Part shown: piece after piece, positions 24,565-60,322 of the stretch
Layout of the letters: the number at the start of each line of letters is the position of its first letter
Position numbering within the stretch: the first letter of the stretch is position 1
Virus record (IMG/VR): IMGVR_UViG_3300024262_006558
Coordinates: 62,001-126,000 of that record
Length of the DNA: 64,000 nt
Direction: 5' to 3' (one strand)
The notes under the pieces: model-generated
Database searches by the model: none
What the model was told of the DNA's origin: nothing
The model's input: the letters and a program-made list of their open reading frames with translations, nothing else
Position numbers and translations under genes: made by a program

Positions 24565-24624
24565 ATAACAGAAAATAAAAGATAACTCTTCGAGTCGCTT
24601 AACGCTTATCTTTATTTTCGTGTT
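24565..24624 (-). repeat. Terminal hairpin site of array A, inverted copy of 60263..60322
   Basis: The reverse complement matches 60263..60322 at 59/60 nt. Confidence 0.95.
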
Positions 24625-24688
24625 GTATGCCATTAAAACGGTACGCTCGTACCTCGCCATACAACATGGTATATAAAACATACACTCA

Positions 24689-24847
24689 CTACCACTTTTC
24701 TTCTTTAAGAATTATAGGGTCAAAGGCGTAACCTAAATACGCCTTATACAGTTCAGGTCTTATCCAACCCCTATGTTTAGTTTTTAACCAAATTCCTTTT
24801 TTTATACGCCTTATTATGCGTATTTCATTCCATATACTTGTTATCAT
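24689..24847 (-). CDS. 52-aa basic, Trp-rich peptide encoded inside a hairpin loop
   Basis: Hand translation MITSIWNEIRIIRRIKKGIWLKTKHRGWIRPELYKAYLGYAFDPIILKEEKW. Flanked by arms gtatataaaacata / tacgtttcatatac. Confidence 0.6.
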   Translation of the reverse strand: MITSIWNEIRIIRRIKKGIWLKTKHRGWIRPELYKAYLGYAFDPIILKEEKW

Positions 24848-24890
24848 AATCCGTTCGTTTTACGTTTCATATACTTACCGTTGTAACACA

Positions 24891-25181
24891 TTAGCCAACT
24901 CTCGCTAAGTGCTTTCTAAAATCTTCGTTTTCCTTTTCCATAAATTCAGTAGCCTTTTGCATACATTCAATTAGGTTGTGGTTCTTGGTTTCTATTATTT
25001 CAGCAACTCCTTTCCATTGTCTTACTTCAGATGGGCTACCTTTGTCGCTTACATTTATGAAATAACCATCTTCATAGTCATACATAAAACAGATATTTCT
25101 TTCTTTTGCCAACGCTTCAAAACGTGTTACAACATTTTGTATAGTGCATGGCTTAATTTCGTTTTCTTTATTAGTGTTCAT
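24891..25181 (-). CDS. Cassette hypothetical protein (starts in loop, reads through the site)
   Basis: CTIQNVVTR is encoded by the hairpin arm and GTT. Confidence 0.65.
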   Translation of the reverse strand: MNTNKENEIKPCTIQNVVTRFEALAKERNICFMYDYEDGYFINVSDKGSPSEVRQWKGVAEIIETKNHNLIECMQKATEFMEKENEDFRKHLARVG

Positions 25182-25263
25182 CCTTATTTAAGTTTTTGGT
25201 CATTTATTTAATTAGCGGTTTCAAATCGCCACGACACCATACAAGATGCCGTTGTGTGTAATA

Positions 25264-25473
25264 CTAGCAACTACCATATCTGAAACTCCCAAATCCTTCA
25301 CCTTCGTATTCAGAATCAATAAAGAACCCTAATTTATCAAGTTCCTCAATATCATCCTTGCTCACTAATTCAGGGTCAATAGCTACATAAAAGTAGTCGT
25401 GTTCACAATGGCTTGGGTTTCTTGGGTTGCCATATTTTAAAAGTATTTGTAATGCTTTAATTAAATCTTCCAT
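25264..25473 (-). CDS. Cassette hypothetical protein
   Basis: MEDLIKALQILLKYGN...HCEHD. ATG at 25473. Confidence 0.7.
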   Translation of the reverse strand: MEDLIKALQILLKYGNPRNPSHCEHDYFYVAIDPELVSKDDIEELDKLGFFIDSEYEGEGFGSFRYGSC

Positions 25474-25612
25474 CTTTCTATTTAGTTTGTGGCTTAAATT
25501 CCGTACTACACACAACAATGTATATAGTTTATAAGCCTAATTAATATTATTTTTCAATTTGTAAATTTGTGCTATGGCTTACAAAACCATATACTCAACG
25601 TTATGCTTAACA

Positions 25613-25864
25613 CTATTGCATTAATTCTAACATAGCGTCTATACCATGTATTTGTTTAGTTGCTTTGAGTGTATCGTCTTCTTTGCTCTCTATATTTAAA
25701 GAGTAGCTTTTGCCATAACAAACTACTTTATCACTATGTATGTGGCAAAATCCAGCACTTATAGGTTCAAGGTGTTTAAAAGTCGAGTGTTCTATTGTTG
25801 TCGGGAAAATTATAATTTCGTCATATTCTCCTAATCTTACGTATTTCTGTTTTGTATCGTACAT
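25613..25864 (-). CDS. Cassette hypothetical protein
   Basis: KYV...IIIFP..IEHS...PISAGFC....CYGKSYSLNI pattern, typical of small phage proteins. Confidence 0.7.
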   Translation of the reverse strand: MYDTKQKYVRLGEYDEIIIFPTTIEHSTFKHLEPISAGFCHIHSDKVVCYGKSYSLNIESKEDDTLKATKQIHGIDAMLELMQ

Positions 25865-25960
25865 TTTCAATTTTAGTTTAGTGGTTTAACAATCCGTGAT
25901 AAGCATAACACAACCTATAAAGCCAAAAAAAAGGCTTATAGCTTTGTGCATTAGGCACAA

Positions 25961-26185
25961 TTAAGAAACGAACTCATTAAATTCATCTTCCTTAATTTCT
26001 CGTGCTTTACTATTCGTTACACCACCATACTTTTTAGATACCTTTAAAACCGCATCATCTTCATTTAATGCAAATGTGTAAGCACTCGAAGGTGTACAGT
26101 AAGGTCTTGATACCCTATAAAATTTAACTGTGCCTAACATTGTGTATAGCACATTGCTTTCGGTGTTTTTTGATACTGTATTCAT
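25961..26185 (-). CDS. Cassette hypothetical protein (reads through site)
   Basis: VLYTMLGTV is encoded by the arm and GTT. Confidence 0.6.
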   Translation of the reverse strand: MNTVSKNTESNVLYTMLGTVKFYRVSRPYCTPSSAYTFALNEDDAVLKVSKKYGGVTNSKAREIKEDEFNEFVS

Positions 26186-26257
26186 AGTTTTAAGTTTTTT
26201 ATTTTCAATTTAAGTTAGTGAGGCAACGCGCCATACACTCGTTCGTTATAGTGCATA

Positions 26258-26440
26258 TTATTGCTTTACTTCTTTACCACAATCAAAACACTCGTATTCT
26301 GTTTCGCTTATTGGTTTTTGCATACTTGGCTGCACACAATCGCAATAAAACGTACCCTTCGGCACAATAACATTATCTATATTTAATAGCTTGTTTTCTG
26401 CTTCCTTTTTACCTTCGTTGTACATTTGAAAATCATTCAT
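26258..26440 (-). CDS. Cassette Cys-rich small protein (reads through site)
   Basis: LNIDNVIVP crosses the site. Contains CxC...CxxC. Confidence 0.6.
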   Translation of the reverse strand: MNDFQMYNEGKKEAENKLLNIDNVIVPKGTFYCDCVQPSMQKPISETEYECFDCGKEVKQ

Positions 26441-26500
26441 AATTCATATTTTTAAGTTATTAATCGCTACTAAAACATAGACCTTACATTATATTTAATG

Positions 26501-26698
26501 CTACTTATGTAGTTCTAAACAACGGTATCTAAAATTATATTCATCGTACCAAAAACTTCTACAATTCCACATATTTATAGCATCCCCATAAACATTATTA
26601 TCAAACTTTAACCCTCTTTCTTCTGCTTGTTTGCAACTGTCTATCACTTTAAATCTGTGATAAAAGCATACAGTCATAAATCTTAATATTTTTTTCAT
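26501..26698 (-). CDS. Cassette hypothetical protein
   Basis: 65 aa, with NVYGDAIN..NCRS.W. Confidence 0.65.
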   Translation of the reverse strand: MKKILRFMTVCFYHRFKVIDSCKQAEERGLKFDNNVYGDAINMWNCRSFWYDEYNFRYRCLELHK

Positions 26699-26792
26699 TT
26701 TATCTATTTTGTTTTTAGTTAATTAACCGCACTAAAATATAACACGGTATAAAATGGCATTAAAACGCCATCTATACAACCGTTATATGCAA

Positions 26793-27101
26793 TTATAGTT
26801 TTAGTATTTGTTTAATGTCTGAATAACTAAACGTGCTACTTTTGAATTGATTCTTATCATTAGGGTTATACTTACCTATTTTATGACAATCTCTTTGTAT
26901 ATGATACAATAAATCACCAGTAGCGTACAGACTGCCATCTTTATTTATGCTGTAAACTACCCCTTCTTTTACCGTGTACAAATCTCTTCTTGCAACATAA
27001 TCTCTACCACAATAACACAAAGATATTTCCGCAAACAACCCACCTTCAAGCTCTCCACTTATTCTTAAATTTTCGGATAGTTCTTTTTCTATTAAATCCA
27101 T
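26793..27101 (-). CDS. Cassette hypothetical protein
   Basis: 102-aa ORF bounded by complementary ends. Confidence 0.65.
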   Translation of the reverse strand: MDLIEKELSENLRISGELEGGLFAEISLCYCGRDYVARRDLYTVKEGVVYSINKDGSLYATGDLLYHIQRDCHKIGKYNPNDKNQFKSSTFSYSDIKQILKL

Positions 27102-27256
27102 TCTATTAAGTTTATCGGTTAATAATCAACTGCATACAGCATATAGTAAACGGCAATACAAAACTTCTACTTTAACATTATGAGCAACATTTTAACCATT
27201 TCTTTATTTGTGGTTATTTATCCGTAAAATAAAACATTTTATAGCTGTACTCATTA

Positions 27257-27895
27257 TCACCCTATTAGCTTAGTGTTTTGTTGAATTAACAATTGAGCAC
27301 CTTCTGAATCTAGATCAAAAAACAAAGACATTTTTTTAACTAGTTCTTGCATGCCCTTTTTGATGTTTTCAAAGAACTCAAGATTATCTTTAGTGTATTC
27401 AATAAACGTCATCCCATCCAATACGGTCCAGTGAATATTATTTACTGAAGAGACTTTATGATCCTCATCTACTGGAAAATACTCATTAGACTTCCCATTA
27501 AATACCTCCATGAAAATTTTATAATCAATTCCAATAGCGCAATCTGGAGCAGTAAAAGCATCGAACCCTTTTATCTTGCGCGACACGCCTTCAATCGTAC
27601 CTGAATAACTACCTTCACTTACACTATTCATCGTTAGAGAAGTTGTTGCTTTGCATCTGTAAGCTATTACAAGGCGTTCACTTTTTTTAAATTCATGATA
27701 CTTTGGTATGGCTTTATATATAGCTTCTGTCAGCTCAGCTTCTGTGTTGTAGCCAGCATTACTAACTCCCGTCAAATTAAAGAACTCCTCATCTATCCCT
27801 CTAATTTCAAAACCATATTTTTGAGTATAAAACAAAGGGTAGGACACTGGATGTTCTGTGCCAATTCTAAATTCTTTTTTACCAACTTTAGCCAT
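27257..27895 (-). CDS. Hypothetical protein upstream of array A
   Basis: 212-aa ORF. No tyrosine-recombinase motifs recognised. Confidence 0.7.
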   Translation of the reverse strand: MAKVGKKEFRIGTEHPVSYPLFYTQKYGFEIRGIDEEFFNLTGVSNAGYNTEAELTEAIYKAIPKYHEFKKSERLVIAYRCKATTSLTMNSVSEGSYSGTIEGVSRKIKGFDAFTAPDCAIGIDYKIFMEVFNGKSNEYFPVDEDHKVSSVNNIHWTVLDGMTFIEYTKDNLEFFENIKKGMQELVKKMSLFFDLDSEGAQLLIQQNTKLIG

Positions 27896-28020
27896 AACAT
27901 ATTTCTTTTGTATGATTTAATAACGAATTAATTTTAAATTTGTTGCCTATGAATCCGTTATAATATTATTACTTAATCGGAAATTTTCCGATTATCATAT
28001 CTCATATTTACATTTTTAGC

Positions 28021-28053
28021 AAAAAAAAAGAGACCCTTTTGAGGTCTCTTTTT
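28021..28053 (-). terminator. Intrinsic terminator after sheath gene
   Basis: A-run, agagacc...ggtctct, T-run. Confidence 0.8.
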
Positions 28054-28076
28054 ATATATTTGATTATTAATCTCTG

Positions 28077-30458
28077 TTAAAAATCTTCGAACGAAGCGCC
28101 AGTTGGTAAAACTTGAAAGGTCAAGTCGATGAATTCAACTGATGGAGTTGGTTGTAATTGAATCTTACCTACCAATGTGTTTCTATCAATTGTATCTGTA
28201 GAGTTCAAAGTGTCATCCATTACCACATTAAAAGCATTTAAACCTCTTTGGTTTTGGATATTCAATAATATTGGCTCCACTTTCGCTAAGAATTGATCTC
28301 TTAACGTCTGATCGTTTTGTTCGAAAAGCAATGTTAAAGATGCTGCAGCTACTAATCTTCTTACTTGAAGTAATAATCTTCTTACGTTGATTCTATCAAG
28401 TGAAGAACTTTGTCTCTGTAGTGTCTTCTGACCAAAGATAACGATACCTTGTTGAACGAAAGATGCAATTGGATTGACTCTTCCTTGGTAAAGCGTATCT
28501 CTGTTTCCAGCGTTCATTTTCACATCAACTTTGTTTACAAAGTCTCCTAACAAACCTCTGTTGATACCTGCTGGCGCGAACCATGGGTTAGCAACATTAT
28601 CTGTAAGCGCGATTGCTTGAACAGCTCCCATTGTAGGTGCTTGGTAAGTATAAACACTATTGTTAGCGTCTATAATTTGAATCCAAGGCCAATAAGTAGC
28701 AGCATAACTAGAATCAATTCCTGTTGAATCTAATATAGACACAATCTCTTCTGGAGTTCCCTTAACTTCACCAGAGGTAAGTCTTGGAGCATCCATTATG
28801 TATAAGCTATCAGCTCTATCTTCAACCATTTCAAGCGCAGAATTAATTAACTCAAAGTTATTTGAGAAATCTATACCTGGCGTTGCGAATAGGTTGATGT
28901 CAACCTCTTCTGGATTAGAAAATGTTCCAATACCTGCTTTAAATGAATTTGAGTTATCTATTTTAGATGCTGCAAATTCTTCATATTGCTCTTCATAAGA
29001 ATACAATTTATCCCATCCATCAAAACCGCCTGCTGGCACTAATGTGAATTTCAATTTATTTCTATCAATTCTAGTTCCTGCAGCATTAGTATAAGCTGAC
29101 ATTGAAATTTTATCTCCAGTAGTAAATCCTGTTGGCGCAGCGCTTTCCATATGGAAACCGTTAACAGTTGTCATTCCGCTAGAAACCCCTCCTTGATAAG
29201 AGAAAAAATCTTTCTCAAGAGTCTTGATAGAATTCTGGAAAGAAATCTCATTTTGAGTTTGAGAAGTGTATCCAAGCTCAGTAAGACCTAAATAAGATCT
29301 AAAGATTGAATCTCCTGACAAATATGTAGTTTTATAAAATAAATCTGGAGCAGTTGTTCCAGAAACTCCATTATTTCTAATGCTATATCCTCTAAAACCA
29401 CCTGGTACAGTGTTAGATGGTATATTTTGAGCCATCTCTACAGTTATGTAAGAAGATCTCCTTGGGTAATCCTCATCAGTTGTACCAATTACTCTTGCAA
29501 TGTAACCGTTTGAAGTTTCATCTAACGAAAGATTAGAGAATCTTTCAAGAGCTGTTTGGCTAGCTGTTTTGTCTGTATCATTAAAGCTTCTTACTAGAAG
29601 ATCGAATGTATAGTTGTTAATGTCAATGTTTTGAATTGATATCTTGATTTCTTCATTTGCAGAATCACCATCAGAAATTGTTCTAACCTTGAAAAGGTTT
29701 CTAACTTCATTTCCTATAACTCTAGAAACAACCCATGGAGTAACTGCGTCAGAATAACTGTCAGCATAATCTGTATAAGAAGCATCATTTGCGTATACTA
29801 AAGTAGGACTCAAATCTGACAACTCACCTCTTGCAAAAGATTCTCTCACATAATGAGGAAAAATACTTTCAACATAAAGATCAATTTCCCCTGTTATAAC
29901 ATCTGGACTTTCACCTAACGCTCTAACAATGTAATCATCTCTAGTTTCATCTAAAGATACTGTCATTCCGCTTCCAGTAATCCCTGTCATAGGACCTGTA
30001 GTTGCGCTTAATACGAATGAACTAAGAGGTGTACTACCTGTAGTTAACCCCCCTATAGTCACGTCACTTTCCTCATTGAATGAGAACTCTCCGCTAATTT
30101 GATTTGCTTTACTTCTAAGAACTGCTAATACTGATCCAGCATTAGTTGATCCTGTTCCAGCAACGATTAACCACGCTCCTGAGTTAGTAAAACCATTTTG
30201 TCCCAAAATTCTTGTGACCGTTAACTCATTGGACTGTGCCAAGAATGCGTTCGCAACATAAGGGAGTGAAAATTTAGGGTTTGTGCTTCCAAATCTTGCA
30301 AGGTACTCATCGGTACTTGCAATTTTTACTGGTTCGAAAGCAGGCCCTTTTAACGTTTTACCAACAAGACCCAATCTTGTGATACCAACTCTTGATGCAA
30401 AGATGGTAAAATCTTGTTCTCTAGTAAAAACACCTGGTGATAAGAATACTGTAGCCAT
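28077..30458 (-). CDS. Tail sheath protein (T4 gp18-like)
   Basis: SPGVFTREQD N-terminus; YAATYWPW, PWFAPAG.NRG, NPI, GQKTLQ...DRINVRRL C-terminus. Confidence 0.95.
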   Translation of the reverse strand: MATVFLSPGVFTREQDFTIFASRVGITRLGLVGKTLKGPAFEPVKIASTDEYLARFGSTNPKFSLPYVANAFLAQSNELTVTRILGQNGFTNSGAWLIVAGTGSTNAGSVLAVLRSKANQISGEFSFNEESDVTIGGLTTGSTPLSSFVLSATTGPMTGITGSGMTVSLDETRDDYIVRALGESPDVITGEIDLYVESIFPHYVRESFARGELSDLSPTLVYANDASYTDYADSYSDAVTPWVVSRVIGNEVRNLFKVRTISDGDSANEEIKISIQNIDINNYTFDLLVRSFNDTDKTASQTALERFSNLSLDETSNGYIARVIGTTDEDYPRRSSYITVEMAQNIPSNTVPGGFRGYSIRNNGVSGTTAPDLFYKTTYLSGDSIFRSYLGLTELGYTSQTQNEISFQNSIKTLEKDFFSYQGGVSSGMTTVNGFHMESAAPTGFTTGDKISMSAYTNAAGTRIDRNKLKFTLVPAGGFDGWDKLYSYEEQYEEFAASKIDNSNSFKAGIGTFSNPEEVDINLFATPGIDFSNNFELINSALEMVEDRADSLYIMDAPRLTSGEVKGTPEEIVSILDSTGIDSSYAATYWPWIQIIDANNSVYTYQAPTMGAVQAIALTDNVANPWFAPAGINRGLLGDFVNKVDVKMNAGNRDTLYQGRVNPIASFVQQGIVIFGQKTLQRQSSSLDRINVRRLLLQVRRLVAAASLTLLFEQNDQTLRDQFLAKVEPILLNIQNQRGLNAFNVVMDDTLNSTDTIDRNTLVGKIQLQPTPSVEFIDLTFQVLPTGASFEDF

Positions 30459-30481
30459 TTAACTTCTATTTTTAGTCTTTT

Positions 30482-30835
30482 TTACTCGGTTTTTTTTGTT
30501 TTTTTACTTTTTGCAGAAGAAGCTTCCTTAATGATTTCCGAATCTTTCTCATCAATCACTCCGTCCTTGTTTACATCTGCAATATATTCTTCAGTTTGTT
30601 CTTTAGCCTTTTCCACTTCAGAAATCACTTTCTTTGGTGCTTCAGGGGCTGGAGCTGCTATTGAAGCTTCTACTAGGTGTCCATGTTTAAATAGAAATTT
30701 GTTAACCACTTGATCAACACTATTCAAAGTTGGAATATCAACCGTTTCACCAGCTAATATCTTGTATACAACCGATCTAACTCCATCTTTGAAGTGTAAT
30801 GTGGCATATCCTTGTTTTGTGTTCCTAACTATCAT
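30482..30835 (-). CDS. Hypothetical protein with an EF-hand/dockerin-like loop
   Basis: ADVNKDGVIDEKD. Confidence 0.6.
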   Translation of the reverse strand: MIVRNTKQGYATLHFKDGVRSVVYKILAGETVDIPTLNSVDQVVNKFLFKHGHLVEASIAAPAPEAPKKVISEVEKAKEQTEEYIADVNKDGVIDEKDSEIIKEASSAKSKKTKKTE

Positions 30836-30902
30836 TCTACACGCTATTTTTAGATAAATAGATAAAAATTTTCAAACTTATGCTTATTTACCTGAATACT
30901 AA

Positions 30903-31622
30903 TTAATCTTTTTTCTCGCAAATATTGATTGCTATTTTAGTAATCGTACTTACTTTCTCAAAGTCAGAAGGGTCTATTAATTTTCCGTGTACCTCTAAAG
31001 GTATTCTCACCGTATAAATAGACTCTTGAGTCAAATCATCAATATTATTTTCAGTGCTTGGATCTCCAGACATATATGCTGGAACATCGTATCCATTTAT
31101 TTTCATATATCCTTGAAAATCTGAAAAACCATCTCTTATAATCATCTCATAAAACTCATTTACATCTTCCATGTAATGAGTTTCAAAAATTAATTCATAA
31201 CCAGTATTAACATAAGTTGGTTGTGGAATTTTATAAATATCATACCCTTTTAAAGTTCCGTCAAAAACAGGAACTTTAACAAATGAAAATTTTCTCTTTC
31301 TTGGTATTGTTGACTTAAGTGGGGATAAGCCTTTTTTCACATTCGTCCTATGGATAGTAACAAACGGTCTAGCTATTTCCTCCCCTCTTTCTTCATTATT
31401 AAAAGCCCAGTTTTGTTTTCTTTCCGCCCAAAGTTCTTTGTTTCCCCAAAGAACTGGTACGGGTATTTGCTTATCCGTTTGATCTGTAACAGAAAAATTT
31501 AACTCTTTTATGTAATCAAAAACTCCTAGATCTAAATCCTCTAAAGCAAGCTTCTGAGGCAAAAAATTGCTGTTTTCAAAATTCTTATCCAGTAAATCTT
31601 GTTGGTTTTTTATAGTACCCAT
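30903..31622 (-). CDS. Putative tail terminator/completion protein (gp15-like)
   Basis: Size, position between sheath and neck genes, and IPVPV...PFVTI.R...IPQP.Y...YEL pattern. Confidence 0.55.
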   Translation of the reverse strand: MGTIKNQQDLLDKNFENSNFLPQKLALEDLDLGVFDYIKELNFSVTDQTDKQIPVPVLWGNKELWAERKQNWAFNNEERGEEIARPFVTIHRTNVKKGLSPLKSTIPRKRKFSFVKVPVFDGTLKGYDIYKIPQPTYVNTGYELIFETHYMEDVNEFYEMIIRDGFSDFQGYMKINGYDVPAYMSGDPSTENNIDDLTQESIYTVRIPLEVHGKLIDPSDFEKVSTITKIAINICEKKD

Positions 31623-31699
31623 AGAGATGTTTATTAATAAATAGCTAACAAATATTTGATTTTTCGCTTTTTACGAGATATATTTGTTTTGTTGTAACC

Positions 31700-31995
31700 C
31701 TTAAAAGGGTGTGAAAGGATATTAAATACTTGAACATTAAACTACGTTCCCCAATGAGATACACGGGTAATTGTTACGAATGCATCCCCATAATACTAGG
31801 GGGTAAATGCTAAGTCTATTATCTTTGTTCTGAGGTGTTATTGAGATAATGGAGCCTAAATCAATGGGGAACTCGTCTTCACAGGAAGTTATCTCGGTTA
31901 ACATGCAATAAGCGCCCCCTATAGATTCCCTTTTTAAAGAGGGGGACTTTAGGGGGTGTTTCTTGCAGATGACCAATCTGCAAAAGAATCTATCT
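31700..31995. ncRNA. Candidate structured non-coding RNA
   Basis: Nested stems gttccccaatga(31747)/tcaatggggaac(31861), gcgccccct/agggggtgt and ttgcagat/atctgcaa. GC-richer than flanks. TAnnTTTG at 31679. Confidence 0.45.
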
Positions 31996-32017
31996 TCTAG
32001 GAATTTATTCTTGAGCC

Positions 32018-32494: not shown

Positions 32495-32531
32495 AATGGA
32501 ATTTATTGATTTAAAATGTTAATGTAAACAA

Positions 32532-33098: not shown

Positions 33099-33104
33099 AA
33101 TTTA

Positions 33105-34283: not shown

Positions 34284-34292
34284 AATTATTTA

Positions 34293-34958: not shown

Positions 34959-34959
34959 T

Positions 34960-35667: not shown

Positions 35668-35669
35668 AG

Positions 35670-35694: not shown

Positions 35695-35714
35695 AATAAA
35701 ACAAATACAGACTT

Positions 35715-49229: not shown

Positions 49230-49874
49230 ATGAAAAAGCCAACTATAAACATATATTCAATAACAAGCTCTAATCAAAATTCATGTATATACATAGGAGT
49301 AACTTCTAGGAGTTTAAAAATTAGACTTTCTGAACATATTAGAAATAATACTGGAACATGTTTCAAACAATGGTTGGAGCAAGAAATTAGCCAAGGTCAT
49401 GAAATTTTTATTAACACACTAGATGTTGTATATAAAAAAGAGTCTAAATTTTGGGAAGGGTTTTGGATATGTAACTTTAAATCCTGGGGGTTTACAACCC
49501 TAAATTCAAATATTGGAGGAGGTGGCCCTCTTTATATGACTACACAACAAAAAGAGAAAATGAGTCTTTGTAAGAAGGGTGTGAAAAACCCTTTTTATAA
49601 TAAGAAGCACACAAAAATTTCTAAAGAAAAAATAAGCTGTAACAACTCCAGGTATTGGAAAGGTAGAAAATTAAGACCAGAAATGGTTAGAAAACTTTCT
49701 GAATCCAACTCTATACCAGTGGATCAATTTGATAAATTAGGGAACTTTATAAAGCATTGGAGCTCTATAACAGAGGCTTCAAACATATTGGGTATAGACT
49801 CAAGTTCAATCGTTAAAGTGTTAAAAAACAAAAGAAAAAAAGCAGGAAACTATGGATGGAAATATAAAAAATAG
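49230..49874 (+). CDS. GIY-YIG homing endonuclease with NUMOD3/NUMOD1 domains
   Basis: IYSI...IYIGVT...RL.EH, NPFYNKKHT..SKEKIS, SITEAS..LGI....I..V......AG.Y.WKY. Confidence 0.85.
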   Translation: MKKPTINIYSITSSNQNSCIYIGVTSRSLKIRLSEHIRNNTGTCFKQWLEQEISQGHEIFINTLDVVYKKESKFWEGFWICNFKSWGFTTLNSNIGGGGPLYMTTQQKEKMSLCKKGVKNPFYNKKHTKISKEKISCNNSRYWKGRKLRPEMVRKLSESNSIPVDQFDKLGNFIKHWSSITEASNILGIDSSSIVKVLKNKRKKAGNYGWKYKK

Positions 49875-51056: not shown

Positions 51057-51058
51057 TT

Positions 51059-51970: not shown

Positions 51971-51971
51971 T

Positions 51972-53959: not shown

Positions 53960-54032
53960 TGAGGGTCATAGGAAACTATTTTTTCACCATTCTAGAAAAA
54001 GGGGAAGTTTGAAACTTTAAAATATATTGAAA

Positions 54033-54824
54033 ATGTATAAAAATATTGTCACATCTCAACTTGCTGGAGGCCTTGGCAACTATTTATTTCAAATAGCTGC
54101 AGCATACTCTTATGCTCTAAAGCATGGCAAAAAGCCAGTTTTTAACACTAATTTATCCATAAAAGTTCACAGGGGAATAGAATGTTATTTTGACAACATA
54201 CTTCGATCGATAGAGAAGAAAGATACGGTAGCAACTCAGACCACAATTGGTGAACAAGGATTTCAATTTACAGAATTGCCTTTTGTTGCAAATGGAGTAG
54301 CTTTAACTGGATATTTTCAATCTGAAAAATACTTTAAGGAATACGAAAAAGAGATTAAAGATCTCTTTTCCTGCCCTGATCACATAAAAGAATCTATAAA
54401 CAAAAGATTCCCTAGTATGGATAGTGTGGAATCATGTTCTATACATGTCCGCAGAGGTGACTATGTAAAACTGCAAGATATACACCCAGTTCAGAGCATG
54501 CCTTACTTTATGAAAGCTTTAAATAAGATGCCAAAAGATTGTAGCATATTTGTTTTTTCTGATGATATAGAGTGGTGTAAAAATTCTTTCCCAGATATGG
54601 GGGAAAGAATTCATTTCGTAGAAGGATATTCCGATGTAGAAGATTTGTATTTAATGTCAATGTGTGATCATAACATTATTTCAAATAGCACTTTTTCATG
54701 GTGGGCTGCCTGGTTAAATGATAATCCTAAAAAAATAGTAGTGGCTCCAAAGAAATGGTTTGGGCCAATGAACTCTCATTTAGATACAAAGGATATTTAT
54801 CCAGAAAAATGGGAGAAAATATAA
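54033..54824 (+). CDS. GT11 alpha-1,2-fucosyl/colitosyl-transferase
   Basis: GGLGNYLFQ, GYFQSEKYF, HVRRGDY, FSDDI.WC, NSTFSWW.AWL. Confidence 0.92.
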   Translation: MYKNIVTSQLAGGLGNYLFQIAAAYSYALKHGKKPVFNTNLSIKVHRGIECYFDNILRSIEKKDTVATQTTIGEQGFQFTELPFVANGVALTGYFQSEKYFKEYEKEIKDLFSCPDHIKESINKRFPSMDSVESCSIHVRRGDYVKLQDIHPVQSMPYFMKALNKMPKDCSIFVFSDDIEWCKNSFPDMGERIHFVEGYSDVEDLYLMSMCDHNIISNSTFSWWAAWLNDNPKKIVVAPKKWFGPMNSHLDTKDIYPEKWEKI

Positions 54825-54967
54825 TGATTTAGGTAGTGATATTAATCTGAATCACTTTTGAATTTTGAAGGACCTAAAATGAGGAAAATGTTAAACGATA
54901 AAGGTAGTAAATGATTATCTAGATAATCATTTAATAAATAGAATTAAACGTATTTATAAAAAAGATT

Positions 54968-55348
54968 GTGAAATTTATGAGAAAACTCTTCTACGTAAAT
55001 AATAGTGGATATAAAACGTCTCTTAATCAAACTCTCAGGCAAGCTGAAGAATCTGCCACAATTAATTACATAAGGGAGAAGTGCAGCGTTTTTATAGCTC
55101 AAATGATTGAATTAAATATAGAGTCGACATTTGGCCCAATGGAATTGCATAACTTTAATATAAGGTGTAGCAAATTTTTTAAGACTATTAATGTCCATGA
55201 TTTTGGTGTAGTATATGATGAGTCTATTTGGATGCCTCAAGACATACCAAGAAATATGTTAAGGGTAACAGTTCAATTAAGCAGTTATTTACATGCATAT
55301 GAGATGGACTTCTCTATATCTAATATTAAGAAAAAATACAATTTATGA
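54968..55348 (+). CDS. Hypothetical protein resembling the tail sheath C-terminal domain
   Basis: NQTLRQ...F.VVYDE......IPRNML...VQL parallels sheath GQKTLQR...FNVVMDD......IDRNTL...IQL. Confidence 0.45.
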   Translation: MKFMRKLFYVNNSGYKTSLNQTLRQAEESATINYIREKCSVFIAQMIELNIESTFGPMELHNFNIRCSKFFKTINVHDFGVVYDESIWMPQDIPRNMLRVTVQLSSYLHAYEMDFSISNIKKKYNL

Positions 55349-56277
55349 AAAGTAAAAGACCGACTAATACAATAATAGTAACTGGAGGCTCTGGGTTACT
55401 TGGAAAACATTTACGAGAAATATGGGATAATGATCACGTAATTTATATTTCATCTAAAGACTTTGATCTCACAAACGAGCAATCGGTTAGAACAATGTTT
55501 AAATTTTACCAACCAAAAGTTGTAGTTCATCTAGCGGCTCAAGTTGGAGGTATTATGGATAATTCTAAACATCCAGTTAAATACCTTAACAATAACATAA
55601 AGATGGATGCTAATGTGTTAAAGTGGGCTGAAGATTTCGGAGTCGAAAAAGTAATAGGCATGCTTAGTACATGTATATATCCTGATAATCTAAATGAAGA
55701 TCAATATCCTATGAAAGAGGAAGTGCTTCATGATGGACCTCCAGCTATAACAAATTTCTCATACGGATACGCCAAGCGATGCATGGCAGTTCAAATGGAG
55801 GCGTACAATAAAGAGTTTGGAACCAATTTTCAATGGATTGCTCCATGCAATCTTTATGGGGAGCATGATAATTTTGATCACGAACAAAAAGCTCACTTTA
55901 TTACAGCTTTAATCAAAAAGATTGATACTGCAGTAAAAAATGGAGATGATAATATTCAACTGTTCGGAACTGGGTCTCCATTGCGTCAATTTATGCATGC
56001 TGGAGATTTAGCTAAAATTATCATAGATTGTGTCGAAAATGATTATAATTTAAATATGAATGTTGCAGTCCCTTGGAATTACTCAATTAAGGATATGGCT
56101 GAAATAGCTCTTAAAGCTTGCGGGGCTGAGCATCTAAAGATAGAATTTGACCCATCTAAGCCAGATGGTCAATATAGAAAAGATGCATCAACTGAAAGGT
56201 TTAAAAAAACCTTCCCCGACTTTCAGTTTACCTCACTTGAAGAAGGTATAAAAAAGGTTTATCAAGCATTGCAATAA
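55345..56277 (+). CDS. fcl: GDP-L-fucose synthase / ColC-type epimerase-reductase
   Basis: TGGSGLLG, HLAA.VGGI, STCIYP, YGYAKR, PCNLYG, GTG.PLRQF, KPDG. Confidence 0.9.
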   Translation: MKSKRPTNTIIVTGGSGLLGKHLREIWDNDHVIYISSKDFDLTNEQSVRTMFKFYQPKVVVHLAAQVGGIMDNSKHPVKYLNNNIKMDANVLKWAEDFGVEKVIGMLSTCIYPDNLNEDQYPMKEEVLHDGPPAITNFSYGYAKRCMAVQMEAYNKEFGTNFQWIAPCNLYGEHDNFDHEQKAHFITALIKKIDTAVKNGDDNIQLFGTGSPLRQFMHAGDLAKIIIDCVENDYNLNMNVAVPWNYSIKDMAEIALKACGAEHLKIEFDPSKPDGQYRKDASTERFKKTFPDFQFTSLEEGIKKVYQALQ

Positions 56278-56389
56278 AGTTTAGATATTCATAAAGATGA
56301 TCCTGCTATAGTTTGACAGGTATTGCATTTTAAACTCAAAAATGATACCTTTACCTTTTGACTCTGAATAATAACTTTAATATATCTAT

Positions 56390-56701
56390 ATGAAGCTTAT
56401 AAATCTAAAACAAGTATCTGATCATAAAGTTAACAAATGGCTTGAGGATAATATAGCTGAACTAACCGCATACCAAAAAGAGCGCATTAGAAATGATGAG
56501 ATGGTAAGATGGGCTCCTTTTAAATTCTATGAACGTAGGAAGAAGGTTGACAGTATATGGATTAGGATATCTGCTTTGTTTATACCTTTAGCGTGGACCG
56601 TGCTAGTTATTGGGCTGCCTTTCGACTTTCTCATTACTGGAACTTGGGGATATAATAAGATAGACTGGTTTAGCAACTGGAGCAGCGCTTGTGGGTTTTA
56701 A
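56390..56701 (+). CDS. Hypothetical membrane protein at the head of array B
   Basis: 103 aa with a hydrophobic segment; the stop codon overlaps the first site. Confidence 0.65.
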   Translation: MKLINLKQVSDHKVNKWLEDNIAELTAYQKERIRNDEMVRWAPFKFYERRKKVDSIWIRISALFIPLAWTVLVIGLPFDFLITGTWGYNKIDWFSNWSSACGF

Positions 56702-56738
56702 TGTTAAGTATATGAGTAGGATTTTAAACGATTAAGTA

Positions 56739-56876
56739 ATGAGCAGTAAAAAGCACGATAAATTAAACAACGCAGAAGTTATAAAGGTGTTAGAAGAAAT
56801 AACAACGGAAGAGAAGTTAGCAATGTTTGGAATAACTAAACCAAGTACAGATGATAAAGATAAGCCGAAAAAGTAA
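56739..56876 (+). CDS. 45-aa peptide inside a hairpin loop
   Basis: MSSKKHDKLNNAEVIKVLEEITTEEKLAMFGITKPSTDDKDKPKK, between arms 56708-56729 and 56877-56898. Confidence 0.5.
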   Translation: MSSKKHDKLNNAEVIKVLEEITTEEKLAMFGITKPSTDDKDKPKK

Positions 56877-57051
56877 GTTTAAAATATTACGCATATACCT
56901 TGTTGTGAAGCGTTTTATGGGCGAGATGTTTACTTTTGAGTGCCACCATAAAAAATGCGATGGTAGGTGCTCTTACTTAGGTGATGATAGGCAGACAGGA
57001 GTTTGGATTAGCTTATATGAATGCAATAAGTGCGGAACTGAATGGATGTAA
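56851..57051 (+). CDS. Cassette Cys-rich protein (reads through site)
   Basis: ILRIYLVVKR is encoded by the arm and GTT; C-terminal CxxC. Confidence 0.55.
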   Translation: MIKISRKSKFKILRIYLVVKRFMGEMFTFECHHKKCDGRCSYLGDDRQTGVWISLYECNKCGTEWM

Positions 57052-57073
57052 TGCTTTACAATAATATATATAT

Positions 57074-57382
57074 ATGACATTTGAAGAAATAGAAACAAAC
57101 CCTGATCTTTCAAACAATTCAGAGCAGGAATATGTTAGACTTAAAAAAAGAAACGTAATGATCAGAAAGTCATTCTACCATAGCTACAATAAATCGGTCT
57201 GCGAGTATGATGTAAACGGTCATCCTACCAAATGCGAATGTGGATGCGAGGATTTCGATCAAGATATCATAGAAATGGTCGAAGGTCATATTCATGAATA
57301 TGACCTTACATGCTCAAATGAAGGCTGTAGAAAAATAGTTGGATACTGGTCTTATGGATCTTGGCAGTCTTTAGAATTGTAA
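57074..57382 (+). CDS. Hypothetical Zn-binding protein
   Basis: CECG...C...C...GYWSYG.W. Confidence 0.65.
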   Translation: MTFEEIETNPDLSNNSEQEYVRLKKRNVMIRKSFYHSYNKSVCEYDVNGHPTKCECGCEDFDQDIIEMVEGHIHEYDLTCSNEGCRKIVGYWSYGSWQSLEL

Positions 57383-57395
57383 TAAAACACATATA

Positions 57396-57635
57396 ATGAA
57401 AAAATTTATAGACATAGAATTGCCTAAAAATTTTATGAACGTATCTATTACCGATAACAACGAATTAGTAGCGGATAACAATAGTAGTTCGGAATGGGAT
57501 ACTTTAAAATTCCCATTGCCAAAAAGGGTGTGGGGAGTGTATAGCTATGAAGCTACCGTAGATAATCAAAACGCTAAATCTATTGCTAGACTAGTTGATT
57601 GTCGAGGTTGGATAAGAAGGTTCTTAGAGGTTTAA
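57396..57635 (+). CDS. Hypothetical protein
   Basis: 79-aa ORF. Confidence 0.6.
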   Translation: MKKFIDIELPKNFMNVSITDNNELVADNNSSSEWDTLKFPLPKRVWGVYSYEATVDNQNAKSIARLVDCRGWIRRFLEV

Positions 57636-57645
57636 TTATAGAATT

Positions 57646-57825
57646 ATGGATATAAAAGAAATAAAAAAAGAAGAGGTAAGTGAAATATATGACTTTTTAG
57701 AGGGGCTGCAAGATTACGGACACATTTACCACTACCCGCCCGAAAATCTTGACGAACCTTTCAAAAAGATAATGGAAGGAATTGAAGAGGTGCAGGGATT
57801 GATGAAAGATAGCTTTGGGATGTAA
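57646..57825 (+). CDS. 59-aa hypothetical protein
   Basis: Hand translation MDIKEIKKEEVSEIYDFLEG...KDSFGM. Confidence 0.55.
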   Translation: MDIKEIKKEEVSEIYDFLEGLQDYGHIYHYPPENLDEPFKKIMEGIEEVQGLMKDSFGM

Positions 57826-58183
57826 TCTTATTTACATGCTGTTAATAAAACTAGGGCAACGTTTAACGTTTTCTAGTAGATTATAATATGCACTCTACCA
57901 TGTGCCCGACATCGGCAACATGGTTTTATGTTGAATTAAATAGGGGTGGGATTAAATGAACGTCTGCACTAGTCGAGTTGAAAATATACTTGCAAGTTGG
58001 TACTAAAGCCAACTATCCTAGCCAACGGGCTTTGCGGTTCACCCTATTTAATGTAACGCTTTGTGTATGGTTAGTAAACCCTTGCACAGACTTTCAAAAT
58101 TAGTATAAACCTTGGTGGGTTTATTACCTACAATGTTAAATGTATGCTTTGCTAGAGATTACGGACAGATAACCACTAAAACA

Positions 58184-58489
58184 ATGGACTTAAAAAAGAG
58201 AATAGAAGAAATTACACAAAACGGAACGCTTGAAAGCGGTGAACAAATAACCTATGTAGATACCGATGACCTTTACTTGTTGCTGAATGAAGTAAACTCT
58301 AGTGAAGTCATACATCTTGTTAGCGATTGGAATGATTGGGTATATGGATCACCTACATCAATAATAGATGGGAGTCATATTGAAGTTATGTGGTCTGACA
58401 ACTCAGTCACTAAAGTTTTTTATGAATGGAGAAGTAAATCTATGGCACATAAGTTACCACCAATAAAGTGGAGGTATTCTAATAGCTAA
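58184..58489 (+). CDS. Cassette hypothetical protein (first 45 codons lie within the hairpin)
   Basis: MDLKKRIEE...SSEVIHLVSDW. GTT at 58319; the TAA overlaps the closing TAAC. Confidence 0.65.
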   Translation: MDLKKRIEEITQNGTLESGEQITYVDTDDLYLLLNEVNSSEVIHLVSDWNDWVYGSPTSIIDGSHIEVMWSDNSVTKVFYEWRSKSMAHKLPPIKWRYSNS

Positions 58490-58581
58490 CGGTTTGGCTA
58501 TGTGCTGAACGTAGAGCAACGGAGTTTTGCATATAGCTAGTGTTATATGCTTTTAATTATTAACAACTAAAGATTATAAAA

Positions 58582-58932
58582 ATGAGTGAAACAGTACATT
58601 ACAGAGGGATTGCTACTAAAATTGAGCAACCAAACGACAAGACATTAATTGATGTCGCAAAAAGTATTTTAACAGAACGTAACAAAGAAATAGCCGACTA
58701 TTATGACAATGTAATAGAGTGTTTGTGTGATAGCTATTATAGAGAATTTTTCTACCATTCAAAAACACAGACCCTTTACAAATTAGACAATAATGAATAC
58801 GAGCCTGATGAAGATATAATAAGAGCAGAACCGAAAGAAAACGGGACTATTGAATATGAGTTAAGATATTATAACGGTGGTGCTGGATTTGATGAATGTA
58901 TGGAAGAGGCTTTTGATAAGCTCGATGCTTAA
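58582..58932 (+). CDS. Cassette hypothetical protein
   Basis: MSETVHYRG...YYNGGAGFDE; bounded by gttatatgc/gcatataac. Confidence 0.75.
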   Translation: MSETVHYRGIATKIEQPNDKTLIDVAKSILTERNKEIADYYDNVIECLCDSYYREFFYHSKTQTLYKLDNNEYEPDEDIIRAEPKENGTIEYELRYYNGGAGFDECMEEAFDKLDA

Positions 58933-59036
58933 TTGCATATAACGGCATCCTGTATGATGTCGTGAAACGAAGTGGAATGCATTCATACACCGTGTTGTGT
59001 GTAGTGCGGATTATTAACTGATAACAAAATTAAAAG

Positions 59037-59216
59037 ATGAATGTATTTGATGAATTTTTAATGGAATCTGAAAAGGAACAATTAAAAGACAACCGACTGA
59101 AAGAACAGAAAGATAAAAAAGACTACTCGTATGAACACGATGGTAGAATAGAAACATGTGACGATTGTAGAACACCTATAAACTCACACGGACACTGCCC
59201 TAGATGCGATTACTAG
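59037..59216 (+). CDS. 59-aa cassette protein with CxxC...CxxC zinc finger
   Basis: Hand translation ends TCDDCRTPINSHGHCPRCDY. Confidence 0.65.
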   Translation: MNVFDEFLMESEKEQLKDNRLKEQKDKKDYSYEHDGRIETCDDCRTPINSHGHCPRCDY

Positions 59217-59267
59217 CATTACACACAACGGATGGTAATATGAATAGTGCGGATTAAAAACATAAAA

Positions 59268-59435
59268 ATGGCAAAGACACGAGAACAAAAAAGAATTGAA
59301 AGTGCGGATAAAGTTTGTAGAGAACTTAGATACCAAATAGTTAAATATGGATTGATAGGTGATTGGGACGCATTAAATAAGCACTTTAATTCTTGGATGA
59401 ATAACGCTAAGAAATCTAAATACGACAGACCCTAG
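59268..59435 (+). CDS. 55-aa protein inside a hairpin loop
   Basis: MAKTREQKR..., between arms gtaatatgaatagtgc and gcattatttatattac. Confidence 0.6.
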   Translation: MAKTREQKRIESADKVCRELRYQIVKYGLIGDWDALNKHFNSWMNNAKKSKYDRP

Positions 59436-59514
59436 CATTATTTATATTACGTGTTGTGCGCACGTTTTAATTGCGACACAACGCTAAGTATAACAAACGG
59501 AAAATTTACGACTT

Positions 59515-59673
59515 ATGAGATTTGAATTAATGCAATGGAAATGGTATAGGAAGTGGAAAGGTGGCTCTTATTACCTTATATGGAATTGGCTACCTATGAA
59601 CACTTTTTGGAGCGACAAACTTATTACAAGCTGTGGAGGCAGAGCCATTAAAGAGGAACACTACCCTAAGTAA
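59515..59673 (+). CDS. 52-aa Trp-rich peptide inside a hairpin loop
   Basis: MRFELMQWKWYRKWKGGSYYLIWNWLPMNTFWSDKLITSCGGRAIKEEHYPK. Confidence 0.6.
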   Translation: MRFELMQWKWYRKWKGGSYYLIWNWLPMNTFWSDKLITSCGGRAIKEEHYPK

Positions 59674-59791
59674 ATTTTATGTTTTGTTATACAATGTTGT
59701 ATGGCAAAGCGTACCGTTTTAATGGCATACAACGGTTGAGTATAAACGTAGTGTTTAACTGAACTTAATTTGAAACACAAAACTTAAAATT

Positions 59792-59992
59792 ATGATAAAA
59801 AGATTGATTGAAAAACTGAAAACATTACGTTTATACTTTGTTAGAAAACGTTGTTTTGAGGTGTATTTCACAGATACCAAAAGTGGAAAGGAAGGAAGAA
59901 TTAATTTATGGGTGAAAGATGTCGATGAAGTAGAACCTTACTTTGAAAAACACTTTCCACATTTGGAATTATATGATATAGGAGAATGTTGA
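59792..59992 (+). CDS. Cassette hypothetical protein (reads through site)
   Basis: TLRLYFVRKR is encoded by the arm and the GTT at 59840. Confidence 0.65.
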   Translation: MIKRLIEKLKTLRLYFVRKRCFEVYFTDTKSGKEGRINLWVKDVDEVEPYFEKHFPHLELYDIGEC

Positions 59993-60102
59993 TTACAATG
60001 TTTTCTAACGACCTGTGTAAAATTTCGTGTGAGGCACGAGCAATGAATTTTAAACCTTGTTAGCGTTTCGTTTTTGAGCGTTGGCATTTAAAAACTAAAA
60101 AG

Positions 60103-60264
60103 ATGAAAGTAAGTATTCAGTTCACAAAAGAAGAATTAAGATTATTAAAAAAGGCGTTATTTTTTGGAATAACACATAATGAAAACAACCAAGAAGCAAA
60201 TAAAATGAATGAATTAGATGCGAAAATGAATTTACTGTGTGCGTTGGCAGAAAATGAACGCTAA
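60103..60264 (+). CDS. 53-aa cassette protein
   Basis: MKVSIQFTKEELRLLKKALFFG...; the TAA overlaps the TAAC of the terminal site. Confidence 0.6.
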   Translation: MKVSIQFTKEELRLLKKALFFGITHNENNQEANKMNELDAKMNLLCALAENER

Positions 60265-60322
60265 CACGAAAATAAAGATAAGCGTTAAGCGACTCAAAGA
60301 GTTATCTTTTATTTTCTGTTAT
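60263..60322 (+). repeat. Terminal hairpin site of array B, inverted copy of 24565..24624
   Basis: aacacgaaaataaagataagcgttaagcgactcaaagagttatcttttattttctgttat. Confidence 0.95.

What the first reader, a model, noticed from the sequence alone, without database searches (positions are those of the whole stretch)
24565..60322. Both arrays end in the same 60-bp site, inverted and 35.6 kb apart
Seen: 24565-24624 is the reverse complement of 60263-60322 at 59/60 nt, while internal sites are highly diverged. Each copy is the last (3') site of its array and lacks the G after AAC seen in most other left arms. Inference: this is a founder or anchor site that seeds new arrays, or a special attachment-type site. 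As inverted repeats, the two copies could also invert the intervening sheath-head-glycan segment.
Basis: partly seen in the sequence, partly recalled or inferred. Interest (0 to 1): 0.8.

Follow-up and report, generated by a model that had tools for sequence, protein, structure and literature searches.

The report
Boundary site of phage gene-cassette arrays
The repeated 60-base hairpin is real: it marks where arrays of small swappable genes, built like bacterial integron cassettes, meet the fixed genome of a roughly 494-kb phage of Bacteroidota, and there is no sign that it flips the 35-kb segment between the two copies.

Summary
Window 24565-24624 and 60263-60322 are inverted copies at 59/60 nt, with none expected by chance.

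The window comes from a T4-like jumbo phage (JGI contig of 494,080 bp). That genome carries six copies of the 60-mer, and two diverged phages carry it too. The stems are invariant in all eight copies. Only the tip hairpin varies, through compensatory changes.

Seven of the eight copies are the last site of an array of small ORFs. One is internal.

The ordinary array sites form a structured AAC...GTT hairpin family. I found it in 20 other viral contigs and in 65 mostly Bacteroidota genome loci. It follows integron-cassette logic: the bases after GTT reappear, reverse-complemented, before the next AAC.

Two phage strains that are 99.99% identical switch to unrelated sequence exactly at an AAC box.

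Phage cassette genes lie on the opposite strand, relative to the site, from bacterial cassette genes. Read in the integron sense, this puts the 60-mer in the attI position.

I found no integrase. Three independent assemblies are collinear, so there is no inversion evidence.

Best reading: an attC-type boundary or anchor site of CALIN-like phage cassette arrays, possibly also a terminator. This is a new variant of a known kind.

The parts
24565..24624 (-). 60-mer copy 1, the boundary site at the 3' end of array 1. Read on the - strand it runs AAC, bulged A/T-rich stem, branched tip, GTTAT.
60263..60322 (+). 60-mer copy 2, the boundary site at the 3' end of array 2. Its AAC overlaps the stop codon of the last cassette ORF.
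24625..27101 (-). Array 1: eight small ORFs (52-102 aa) separated by complete or partial AAC...GTT sites, lying between the sheath-side backbone and 60-mer copy 1.
   Evidence: absent from relatives such as L002
56390..60262 (+). Array 2: about 14 small ORFs. The site-bearing part runs from about 57826. It lies between an epimerase gene and 60-mer copy 2.
58486..58546 (+). Complete generic site (covariance model, 60.1 bits).
58939..58998 (+). Complete generic site (68.5 bits).
26739..26786 (-). Complete generic site (27.1 bits).
25508..25609 (-). Complete site with a long loop, bounded by the private boxes of two neighbouring cassettes.
   Evidence: soil-metagenome pieces end at 25603-25605
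59731..59848 (+). 112-nt site whose loop and 3' arm are overlapped by the start of the next ORF. Its GTT box is at 59840-59848.
60001..60067 (+). Last generic site before copy 2. Its GTT box (60059-60067) is the exact reverse complement of 60257-60265, which abuts the 60-mer.
58542..58943 (+). Example cassette: a 9-nt box at 58542-58550 and its exact reverse complement at 58935-58943 flank the ORF at 58582-58932.
25251..25516 (-). Example cassette: 9-nt boxes at 25508-25516 and 25251-25259 flank the ORF at 25264-25473.
24622..24665 (-). ORF-less mini-cassette next to copy 1. 26 nt are identical to 59708-59733 in array 2.
   Evidence: (I8)
59696..59739 (+). Homologous ORF-less mini-cassette in array 2.
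   Evidence: (I8)
60395..61594 (+). Backbone gene just beyond copy 2: a DegT-type aminotransferase, not a recombinase.
23738..24508 (-). Backbone beyond copy 1: a 36-aa zinc-ribbon ORF (24398-24508) and a 134-aa ORF (23738-24142). No family hit, no recombinase.

Best explanation
The two 60-mers are copies of a dedicated boundary site of integron-like gene-cassette arrays in a jumbo T4-like phage that probably infects Bacteroidota. Shown: the arrays are made of small ORFs separated by a family of structured AAC...GTT hairpin sites. Each ORF is bracketed by a private 7-10 nt inverted repeat, which is one R-box stem split by recombination, exactly as in integron cassettes. The same site family sits just 3' of ORFs in Bacteroidota chromosomes. 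Near-identical phage strains exchange array content precisely at an AAC box. Single cassettes recur elsewhere without the backbone. Shown for the 60-mer: it is a bulged hairpin in the same AAC...GTT frame. It is invariant across eight contexts. Its AAC side is joined to different cassettes by the cassette rule, while its GTT side has no partner and is joined to different backbone genes. Inferred: a tyrosine recombinase of the integron type cuts at the AAC box. This recombinase could come from the host, or from the phage outside the regions I read. The AAC box corresponds to G|TT on the other strand. Because phage cassette genes lie on the opposite strand, relative to the site, from bacterial cassette genes, the 60-mer occupies the position that attI holds in an integron. 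It would act as the fixed anchor against which cassettes are added, lost or swapped. Since array transcription runs into it, it may at the same time stop read-through into the backbone genes.
For: Copies and conservation: searches show six copies in Ga0210003_1000004 plus two in other contigs. The stems are invariant and the tip pair changes T-A to C-G in a compensatory way. Position: it is terminal in 7 of 8 contexts. Structure of the site family: 42 double-change cells against 10.1 in shuffles, with 0/500 shuffles reaching the observed value. Split R box: in viral loci 13 of 34 are exact and 15 have one mismatch, against 0 exact in both controls. In bacterial loci 14 of 47 are exact, against 1 and 0 in the controls. 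Window examples have exact coordinates. Distribution: 20 further viral contigs and 65 genome loci, almost all Bacteroidota. Gene orientation: 25 of 31 viral sites have a same-strand ORF ending at the AAC side, while 41 of 60 bacterial sites have an opposite-strand ORF ending at the GTT side. Recombination point: L153 and L154 are 99.99% identical over 10,269 bp and become unrelated exactly at TAAC of a site. Cassette mobility: the identical 83-aa cassette protein has different neighbours in an ENA contig. Array-1 cassettes and sites occur at 99-100% identity in soil metagenomes without the backbone, with ends at 25603-25605, just after GTT. Asymmetry of the 60-mer: the AAC side pairs with the preceding GTT box, and the GTT side has no exact partner within 6 kb for any copy. 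Integrons are known in Bacteroidota (PMC8618304), and attC clusters without an integrase are known in phages (PMC9892861).
Against: No integrase was found in the window or within about 10 kb of four copies. A motif scan of all fetched loci found a single tyrosine recombinase. It is bacterial and scores below the integron-integrase cut-off. The 60-mer scores only 11-14 bits with the generic-site model. It folds about equally well on both strands, unlike the generic sites, and unlike known attI sites it is a palindrome. The one observed strain difference lies one site away from the 60-mer, not at it. One copy is internal. Some homology ends fall in the conserved 5' leader rather than at the box (25484), so ordinary homologous exchange also contributes. 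The core consensus here is GTT-R-Y-R-Y rather than the canonical GTTRRRY. I could not run the standard attC covariance model.
Confidence: 0.55

Rival explanations
1. The 60-mer is mainly a transcription terminator or insulator that closes each array of co-directional small genes before the next transcription unit. This would be like the stem-loop part of the PeSL promoter-terminator cassettes of T4-type phages. Its conservation would then reflect that function plus gene conversion between copies.
For: It always lies 3' of the array ORFs and 5' of the next gene. In three copies it is followed within about 30 nt by a promoter-like motif that recurs more than 20 times upstream of genes elsewhere in the genome. 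It is a hairpin with a U-rich 3' arm. The tip hairpin shows compensatory change. attC sites are thought to be weak terminators (PMC9892861), and PeSLs combine a terminator and a promoter (PMC2839356, PMC4122927).
Against: The stem is A/T-rich and bulged, and its folding energy is unexceptional (z about -1.7 to -2.7). The terminator scan does not call it. A terminator needs structure, not an invariant stem sequence across diverged phages. This reading does not explain the sharp AAC boundary or the R-box pairing with the preceding cassette. It is compatible with the best explanation as a second role.
Confidence: 0.25
2. The 60-mer is just the attC-type site of one old or ORF-less cassette that has been copied between arrays. 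It has no special boundary role.
For: At copy 2 the GTTAT is directly followed by AAC, as an empty cassette would look. ORF-less mini-cassettes exist in both arrays (I8). A generic site in L153 (6992-7090) carries the same tip module. One copy is internal.
Against: 7 of 8 contexts are terminal. No copy has a partner box downstream, whereas 28 of 34 generic sites have one with at most 1 mismatch. Only copy 2 shows the empty-cassette form. It is conserved in diverged phages, again at array ends.
Confidence: 0.15
3. The inverted pair acts as a switch that inverts the 35.6-kb sheath-head-glycan segment.
For: Two inverted repeats 59/60 identical. T4-type recombination can use patches under 50 bp (statement in PMC2839356). 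The orientation of the small tube block relative to the sheath differs among relatives.
Against: Assemblies from JGI 3300024262, JGI 3300009149 and ENA ERZ27249621 are collinear with the window at the junctions they cover. There is no invertase or other recombinase next to either copy. The genome has six copies in both orientations, so this pair is not special. The rearrangement seen in relatives involves a block of about 1 kb outside the segment.
Confidence: 0.03

Closest known systems
Integron gene cassettes with attC sites, and clusters of attC sites lacking an integrase (CALIN), including those reported in phages (PMC4889954, PMC9892861)
   Same: Imperfect palindromic sites with conserved AAC and GTT triplets, bulges and a variable loop. 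Structure is conserved more than sequence. Each cassette is bracketed by the two halves of one R-box stem. Arrays hold single small ORFs and some ORF-less units. No integrase is nearby. The same site family sits directly 3' of ORFs in Bacteroidota chromosomes.
   Different: In the phage the ORFs lie on the other strand relative to the site, so each site is upstream of its cassette gene and the genes must have their own promoters. The private boxes are 9-10 nt rather than 7. The core is GTT-R-Y-R-Y. Several arrays are spread over one 494-kb virus genome. Nearly every one of them ends in the same dedicated 60-nt site.
attI, the integron's own attachment site
   Same: It is first in the array when read in the integron top-strand sense. 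One side is fixed to the platform and the other is joined to varying cassettes at the conserved G|TT (AAC on the other strand). It is one specific sequence per system, whereas the cassette sites vary.
   Different: There is no adjacent integrase gene or Pc promoter. The 60-mer is a hairpin-forming palindrome, which known attI sites are not. It is present at six or more loci per genome. Cassette entry at it has not been observed.
PeSL (promoter-early stem-loop) cassettes in hyperplastic regions of T4-type phages (PMC2839356, PMC4122927)
   Same: The host genome is a T4-like myovirus. ORFan genes cluster in variable regions between conserved blocks. Conserved stem-loop-containing motifs lie between the genes. 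Content is shuffled between close strains. Some exchange points lie in the conserved leader.
   Different: PeSLs are sigma-70 promoter plus terminator units exchanged by homologous recombination. Here the junctions sit at a conserved triplet, cassettes carry private split inverted repeats, no sigma-70-type promoter excess is seen, and the sites are shared with bacterial chromosomes.

Membership tests
integron attC site | Imperfect inverted repeats with conserved AAC (R'') and GTT (R') triplets around a variable loop, 50-150 nt long | tested here: met
   Generic sites: AAC in 42/43 and GTT in 43/43, lengths 48-127 nt. The 60-mer has AAC...GTT, is 58-60 nt long and forms a bulged hairpin.
integron attC site | The R-box stem is split by recombination, so the bases after GTT at one cassette end are complementary to the bases before AAC at the other | tested here: met
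   Viral: 13/34 exact plus 15 with one mismatch, against 0 exact in controls. Bacterial: 14/47 exact, against 1 and 0. For the 60-mer this is met on the AAC side only.
integron attC site | Secondary structure conserved through covariation | tested here: met
   89.8% of cells paired, 42 double changes against 10.1 in shuffles, 0/500 shuffles as high. Slid controls gave 31-55% paired.
integron attC site | Canonical core consensus RYYYAAC / GTTRRRY | tested here: inconclusive
   The boxes read mostly R-Y-R-Y-AAC and GTT-R-Y-R-Y in the phage. GTTAG.. and GTTGG.. are common in the bacterial loci.
integron attC site | Lies 3' of a promoterless ORF encoded on the top strand | tested here: not met
   Met in bacterial loci (41/60). 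Reversed in phage contigs, where 25/31 have the ORF on the strand that folds.
integron attC site | Extrahelical bases and unpaired central spacer at the canonical positions | tested here: inconclusive
   The generic sites have a 3-5 nt bulge on the 5' arm, a 2-nt bulge on the 3' arm and a conserved G-T wobble. They fold better on one strand. I did not map these features onto the canonical positions.
integron attC site | Recognised by the IntegronFinder/HattCI attC model and recombined by an integron integrase | not testable with these tools
CALIN (cluster of attC sites lacking integrase) | Two or more attC sites with no integron integrase nearby | tested here: met
   Each window array has several sites. 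There is no recombinase in the window or within about 10 kb of four 60-mer copies. This holds only if the sites are accepted as attC.
attI site | Adjacent to intI and the Pc promoter | tested here: not met
   The flanks are an aminotransferase gene and small ORFs of unknown function.
attI site | Fixed first site of the array, joined to varying cassettes at the conserved triplet | tested here: met
   7 of 8 contexts. Identity starts at AAC with different cassettes upstream, and there is no partner box on the other side.
PeSL of T4-type phages | Composite of a strong sigma-70-like early promoter and a terminator stem-loop | tested here: not met
   Promoter-like hits are below shuffle expectation (14 against 21.5), and the 60-mer is not called as a terminator. 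Bacteroidota promoters are not covered by that scan.
invertible DNA segment | Both orientations exist and an invertase is encoded nearby | tested here: not met
   Only one orientation in three samples and no invertase. Rare isomers could not be tested.

The most novel reading that the evidence does not exclude
A jumbo phage runs its own integron-like gene-capture platform. A dedicated hairpin landing pad, the 60-mer, is placed at six or more loci in the genome. Against it, attC-type cassettes shared with Bacteroidota integrons are gained, lost and swapped. The cassette genes are inverted, so they are expressed from their own leaders in the phage but would be antisense and silent in a bacterial integron. 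This would make host integrons and phage arrays a common cassette pool.
Probability: 0.25. Interest if true: 0.85.

Novelty: new variant of a known kind. Interest (0 to 1): 0.66.

Why it matters
Integron cassettes are the best-understood modular gene-exchange system in bacteria. In phages only a few small attC clusters have been reported. Here a very large phage carries at least five long arrays built on the same logic. They use a site family shared with its presumed host phylum, the gene orientation is reversed, and a conserved boundary site ends the arrays. Natural strains differ exactly at the predicted crossover point. If the boundary site proves to be a functional attachment site, it would give a concrete mechanism for how hyperplastic regions of large phages collect ORFan genes. 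It would also give a testable route for cassette traffic between phages and bacterial integrons. The recombinase remains unidentified and is the obvious next target.

Tried and rejected
- Rfam and tRNA search found nothing in the window.
- Nucleotide searches of isolated phages found nothing, whether with 10 kb of the window, a site module or the 60-mer.
- My first collection scan for the 60-mer used a wrong spacer length and found nothing. I corrected it.
- A simple arm-alignment scan for AAC...GTT palindromes was too strict. It recovered only the 60-mers and two other sites, so I replaced it with a covariance model.
- That model found the family in only one locus of the sheath-gene relatives. 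Their variable region after the sheath gene holds larger ORFs and ordinary hairpins.
- Read laying could not test inversion. All runs are stored as short unitigs that end at the repeat. The loose ends at 24563-24630 are the flanks of the other genomic copies. The joint 25253 to 26349 in that output has only 26 nt on one side, so I did not use it.
- The apparent homology of the two 52-aa ORFs next to the mini-cassettes is confined to the site halves. The proteins do not align, so I dropped the idea that array 2 equals array 1 plus two newer cassettes.
- A search for a partner box downstream of each 60-mer found none.
- Cassette proteins have no Pfam hits and only unknown-function PHROG hits.
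- The only tyrosine recombinase near any site is in bacterial locus L142. It is Xer-like and scores below the integron-integrase cut-off.


Full report
**Observation.** The two 60-nt stretches are reverse complements at 59/60 positions and lie 35,638 nt apart. A search allowing three mismatches finds only these two in the window, against none in 100 shuffles.

Both copies lie at the 3' end, in the direction of transcription, of a run of small ORFs.
- Array 1 is on the minus strand, from 27101 down to 24689.
- Array 2 is on the plus strand, from 56390 to 64 nt short of... more precisely to 60264.

Each strand of the 60-mer folds into a long A/T-rich stem with one single-base bulge on each arm and a small branched tip.

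**Where the window comes from.** The window is positions 62001-126000 of IMG/VR contig 3300024262_006558. That record is the first 388,594 bp of the 494,080-bp JGI contig Ga0210003_1000004.

The genes between the two copies are those of a T4-like myovirus. They include a tail sheath, a head-tail adaptor, the major head protein, a prohead protease, PhoH, a GIY-YIG endonuclease, and a block of glycosyltransferase and sugar-nucleotide genes. The nearest cultured relatives of the sheath protein are only about 31% identical and include Flavobacterium phages.

**More copies of the 60-mer.** The full contig holds six copies, and two other metagenome contigs hold one each.

In an alignment of all eight, both stem arms are invariant. 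Variation is limited to the following:
- the one or two bases after AAC;
- loop bases;
- one tip base pair that changes T-A to C-G on both sides.

The sequence on either side is unrelated between copies. To the left, every copy is preceded by different bases ending in AAC. To the right, all share GTTAT and then diverge. The two foreign contigs share nothing else with this genome at the DNA level.

Seven of the eight copies are the last site of an array and are followed by non-array genes. The eighth is internal to an array near 244 kb. It is followed by a 75-nt duplicate of the sequence that follows the terminal copy 1,066 bp further on.

**What the arrays are.** Reading along the ORFs, each complete junction has this order:
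1. the stop codon;
2. a private 6-7 nt block followed by AAC;
3. G;
4. a 5' arm, a loop and a 3' arm;
5. GTT followed by a private 6-7 nt block;
6. a conserved leader;
7. ATG.

The private bases after GTT reappear as an exact reverse complement just before the next AAC, on the far side of the ORF. Window examples are 58542-58550 with 58935-58943, 58994-59002 with 59221-59229, 25600-25609 with 25900-25909, and 60059-60067 with 60257-60265. The last of these abuts the 60-mer.

I built a covariance model from five complete sites. It finds the family on one strand only, the ORF strand in the phage. Across 43 hits in viral contigs the inner helix is supported by covariation: 42 double changes against 10.1 in shuffles, and no shuffle reached the observed value.

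A strict pattern for the site occurs in 20 further viral contigs and in 65 loci of bacterial genomes. Almost all of those are Flavobacteriaceae, Saprospiraceae, Cytophagales and other Bacteroidota.

The split-box rule holds statistically in both sets.
- Viral sites: 13 of 34 exact and 15 with one mismatch, against no exact match in either control.
- Bacterial sites: 14 of 47 exact, against 1 and 0 in the controls.

This is the signature that integron recombination leaves, because it cuts within the R-box stem of a circular cassette. Integrons are known in Bacteroidota (PMC8618304). Clusters of attC sites without an integrase are known in bacteria (PMC4889954) and in a few phages (PMC9892861).

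**Orientation.** In the bacterial loci the site follows an ORF that lies on the strand opposite to the model strand (41 of 60). This makes the model strand the conventional bottom strand. In the viral contigs the ORFs lie on the model strand itself (25 of 31).

The generic sites also fold better on that strand and keep a G-T wobble there. So the phage cassettes carry their genes inverted relative to bacterial cassettes. Read in the integron sense, each phage array starts at the 60-mer.

**Direct evidence for exchange at the box.**
- Locus L154, from another sample, is 99.99% identical to the reference over 10,269 bp. That stretch includes a 60-mer and the cassette next to it. L154 then becomes completely unrelated, and the identity ends exactly at TAAC of the next site.
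- The identical 83-aa protein of array 1 is encoded on an unrelated ENA contig with different neighbours.
- Soil metagenomes hold single cassettes and sites of array 1 at 99-100% identity without the backbone. Piece ends fall at 25603-25605, just after a GTT box, and also at 25484 in the conserved leader.
- Relatives with 55-68% sheath identity lack array 1 altogether. In one of them the sheath gene is 233 bp from the gene that lies beyond the array here.

**What the 60-mer is.** It shares the AAC...GTT frame and a bulged hairpin with the generic sites. One generic site elsewhere in the genome has the same tip module.

It also differs from the generic sites in several ways.
- It scores only 11-14 bits with the generic model.
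- It has A where all 43 generic sites have G.
- It folds about equally on both strands.
- It obeys the cassette rule on one side only. Its AAC side pairs with the preceding GTT box. No copy has an exact partner for its GTT side within 6 kb, whereas most generic sites do.

It is therefore the point where cassette logic stops and the backbone begins. In integron terms that is the place of attI.

I regard a boundary or anchor recombination site as the best reading. I separate out the stronger claim that cassettes enter there, which nothing here shows. The one strain difference I could examine lies one site inward.

A terminator role is a serious rival, or an additional function. Array transcription runs into the 60-mer, and three copies are followed by a promoter-like motif. 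However, the stem is weak, it is not called by the scan, and its sequence invariance is more than a terminator needs.

**Recombinase.** None is encoded in the window or within about 10 kb of four of the copies. A motif scan of all fetched DNA found a single tyrosine recombinase, in a bacterial locus, and it scores below the integron-integrase threshold. About half of the 494-kb genome was not examined. A host enzyme is equally possible.

**Inversion.** A contig from JGI sample 3300009149 is 99.97% identical and collinear through copy 1. Contigs from that sample and from ENA ERZ27249621 are collinear through copy 2. No assembly shows the inverted junctions.

The public runs are stored as unitigs that stop at the repeat, so rare isomers cannot be assessed. 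With six copies in both orientations in the genome, this pair is not special. The orientation differences seen among relatives concern a tube-gene block of about 1 kb outside the segment.

**Comparison and novelty.** The arrays work like integron cassette arrays and meet most structural criteria of attC clusters without an integrase. They fail the usual gene-orientation criterion, and I could not test them with the standard attC model or an integrase.

They resemble the PeSL cassettes of T4-type phages in setting and in outcome (PMC2839356, PMC4122927), but not in the nature of the junctions.

I found no paper describing attC-type arrays in jumbo phages, or a dedicated terminal site. I rate the finding as a new variant of a known kind.

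Noticed in passing
L163 (contig 238859-259080), e.g. 466, 1001, 2044, 5895, 8302, 10296, 12244, 16023, 19333; also L056 961-1000: A 45-60 nt motif (core CCGTATATATTGGTGA, preceded by GTACATAAT and a C-run) recurs more than 20 times just upstream of genes in this part of the genome. It directly follows three 60-mer copies and is absent from the window. It is probably a phage promoter or leader.
   Followed up: partly
window 1-21927, minus strand: A series of very large ORFs (660-960 aa) is built from diverged repeats with periods of 207, 222, 372 and 42 nt. They are probably tail-fibre or adhesin paralogues.
   Followed up: no
window 57826-58132: A 307-nt gap without an ORF lies inside array 2. 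It has long-range complementary stretches and no Rfam match. It could be a small RNA or a decayed cassette.
   Followed up: no
window 24622-24665 and 59696-59739: An ORF-less mini-cassette (a GTTGTATGGC-type box, about 20 nt, then its complement ending in AAC) occurs in both arrays, with 26 nt identical. In array 1 it abuts the 60-mer.
   Followed up: partly
L002-L029 versus window 22096-30458: The order and orientation of the tube gene and two small neighbours relative to the sheath gene differ among relatives (three arrangements). The space after the sheath gene varies from 0.2 to 5.5 kb.
   Followed up: partly
window 49230-49871: A GIY-YIG/NUMOD homing-endonuclease gene sits inside the glycan-gene block.
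   Followed up: no
L153 6992-7090: A generic-type site has a loop carrying the same two-hairpin tip module as the 60-mer. This suggests that the tip is a separable functional piece.
   Followed up: no
IMG/VR 3300024262_006558 versus Ga0210003_1000004: The IMG/VR record (388,594 bp) is the first part of a 494,080-bp JGI contig with the same coordinates. A sixth 60-mer and its array lie in the part left out.
   Followed up: yes
L082 100-520: In a diverged relative the same 12 nt ending in AAC precede both a generic half-site and the 60-mer, 280 nt apart, bracketing one 92-aa cassette. This looks like a recent insertion or duplication next to the 60-mer.
   Followed up: no
window 56939 and 58403: Contigs from two other samples end inside array 2 at these points, although they are otherwise identical to the window. 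This hints at array variation within those populations.
   Followed up: no
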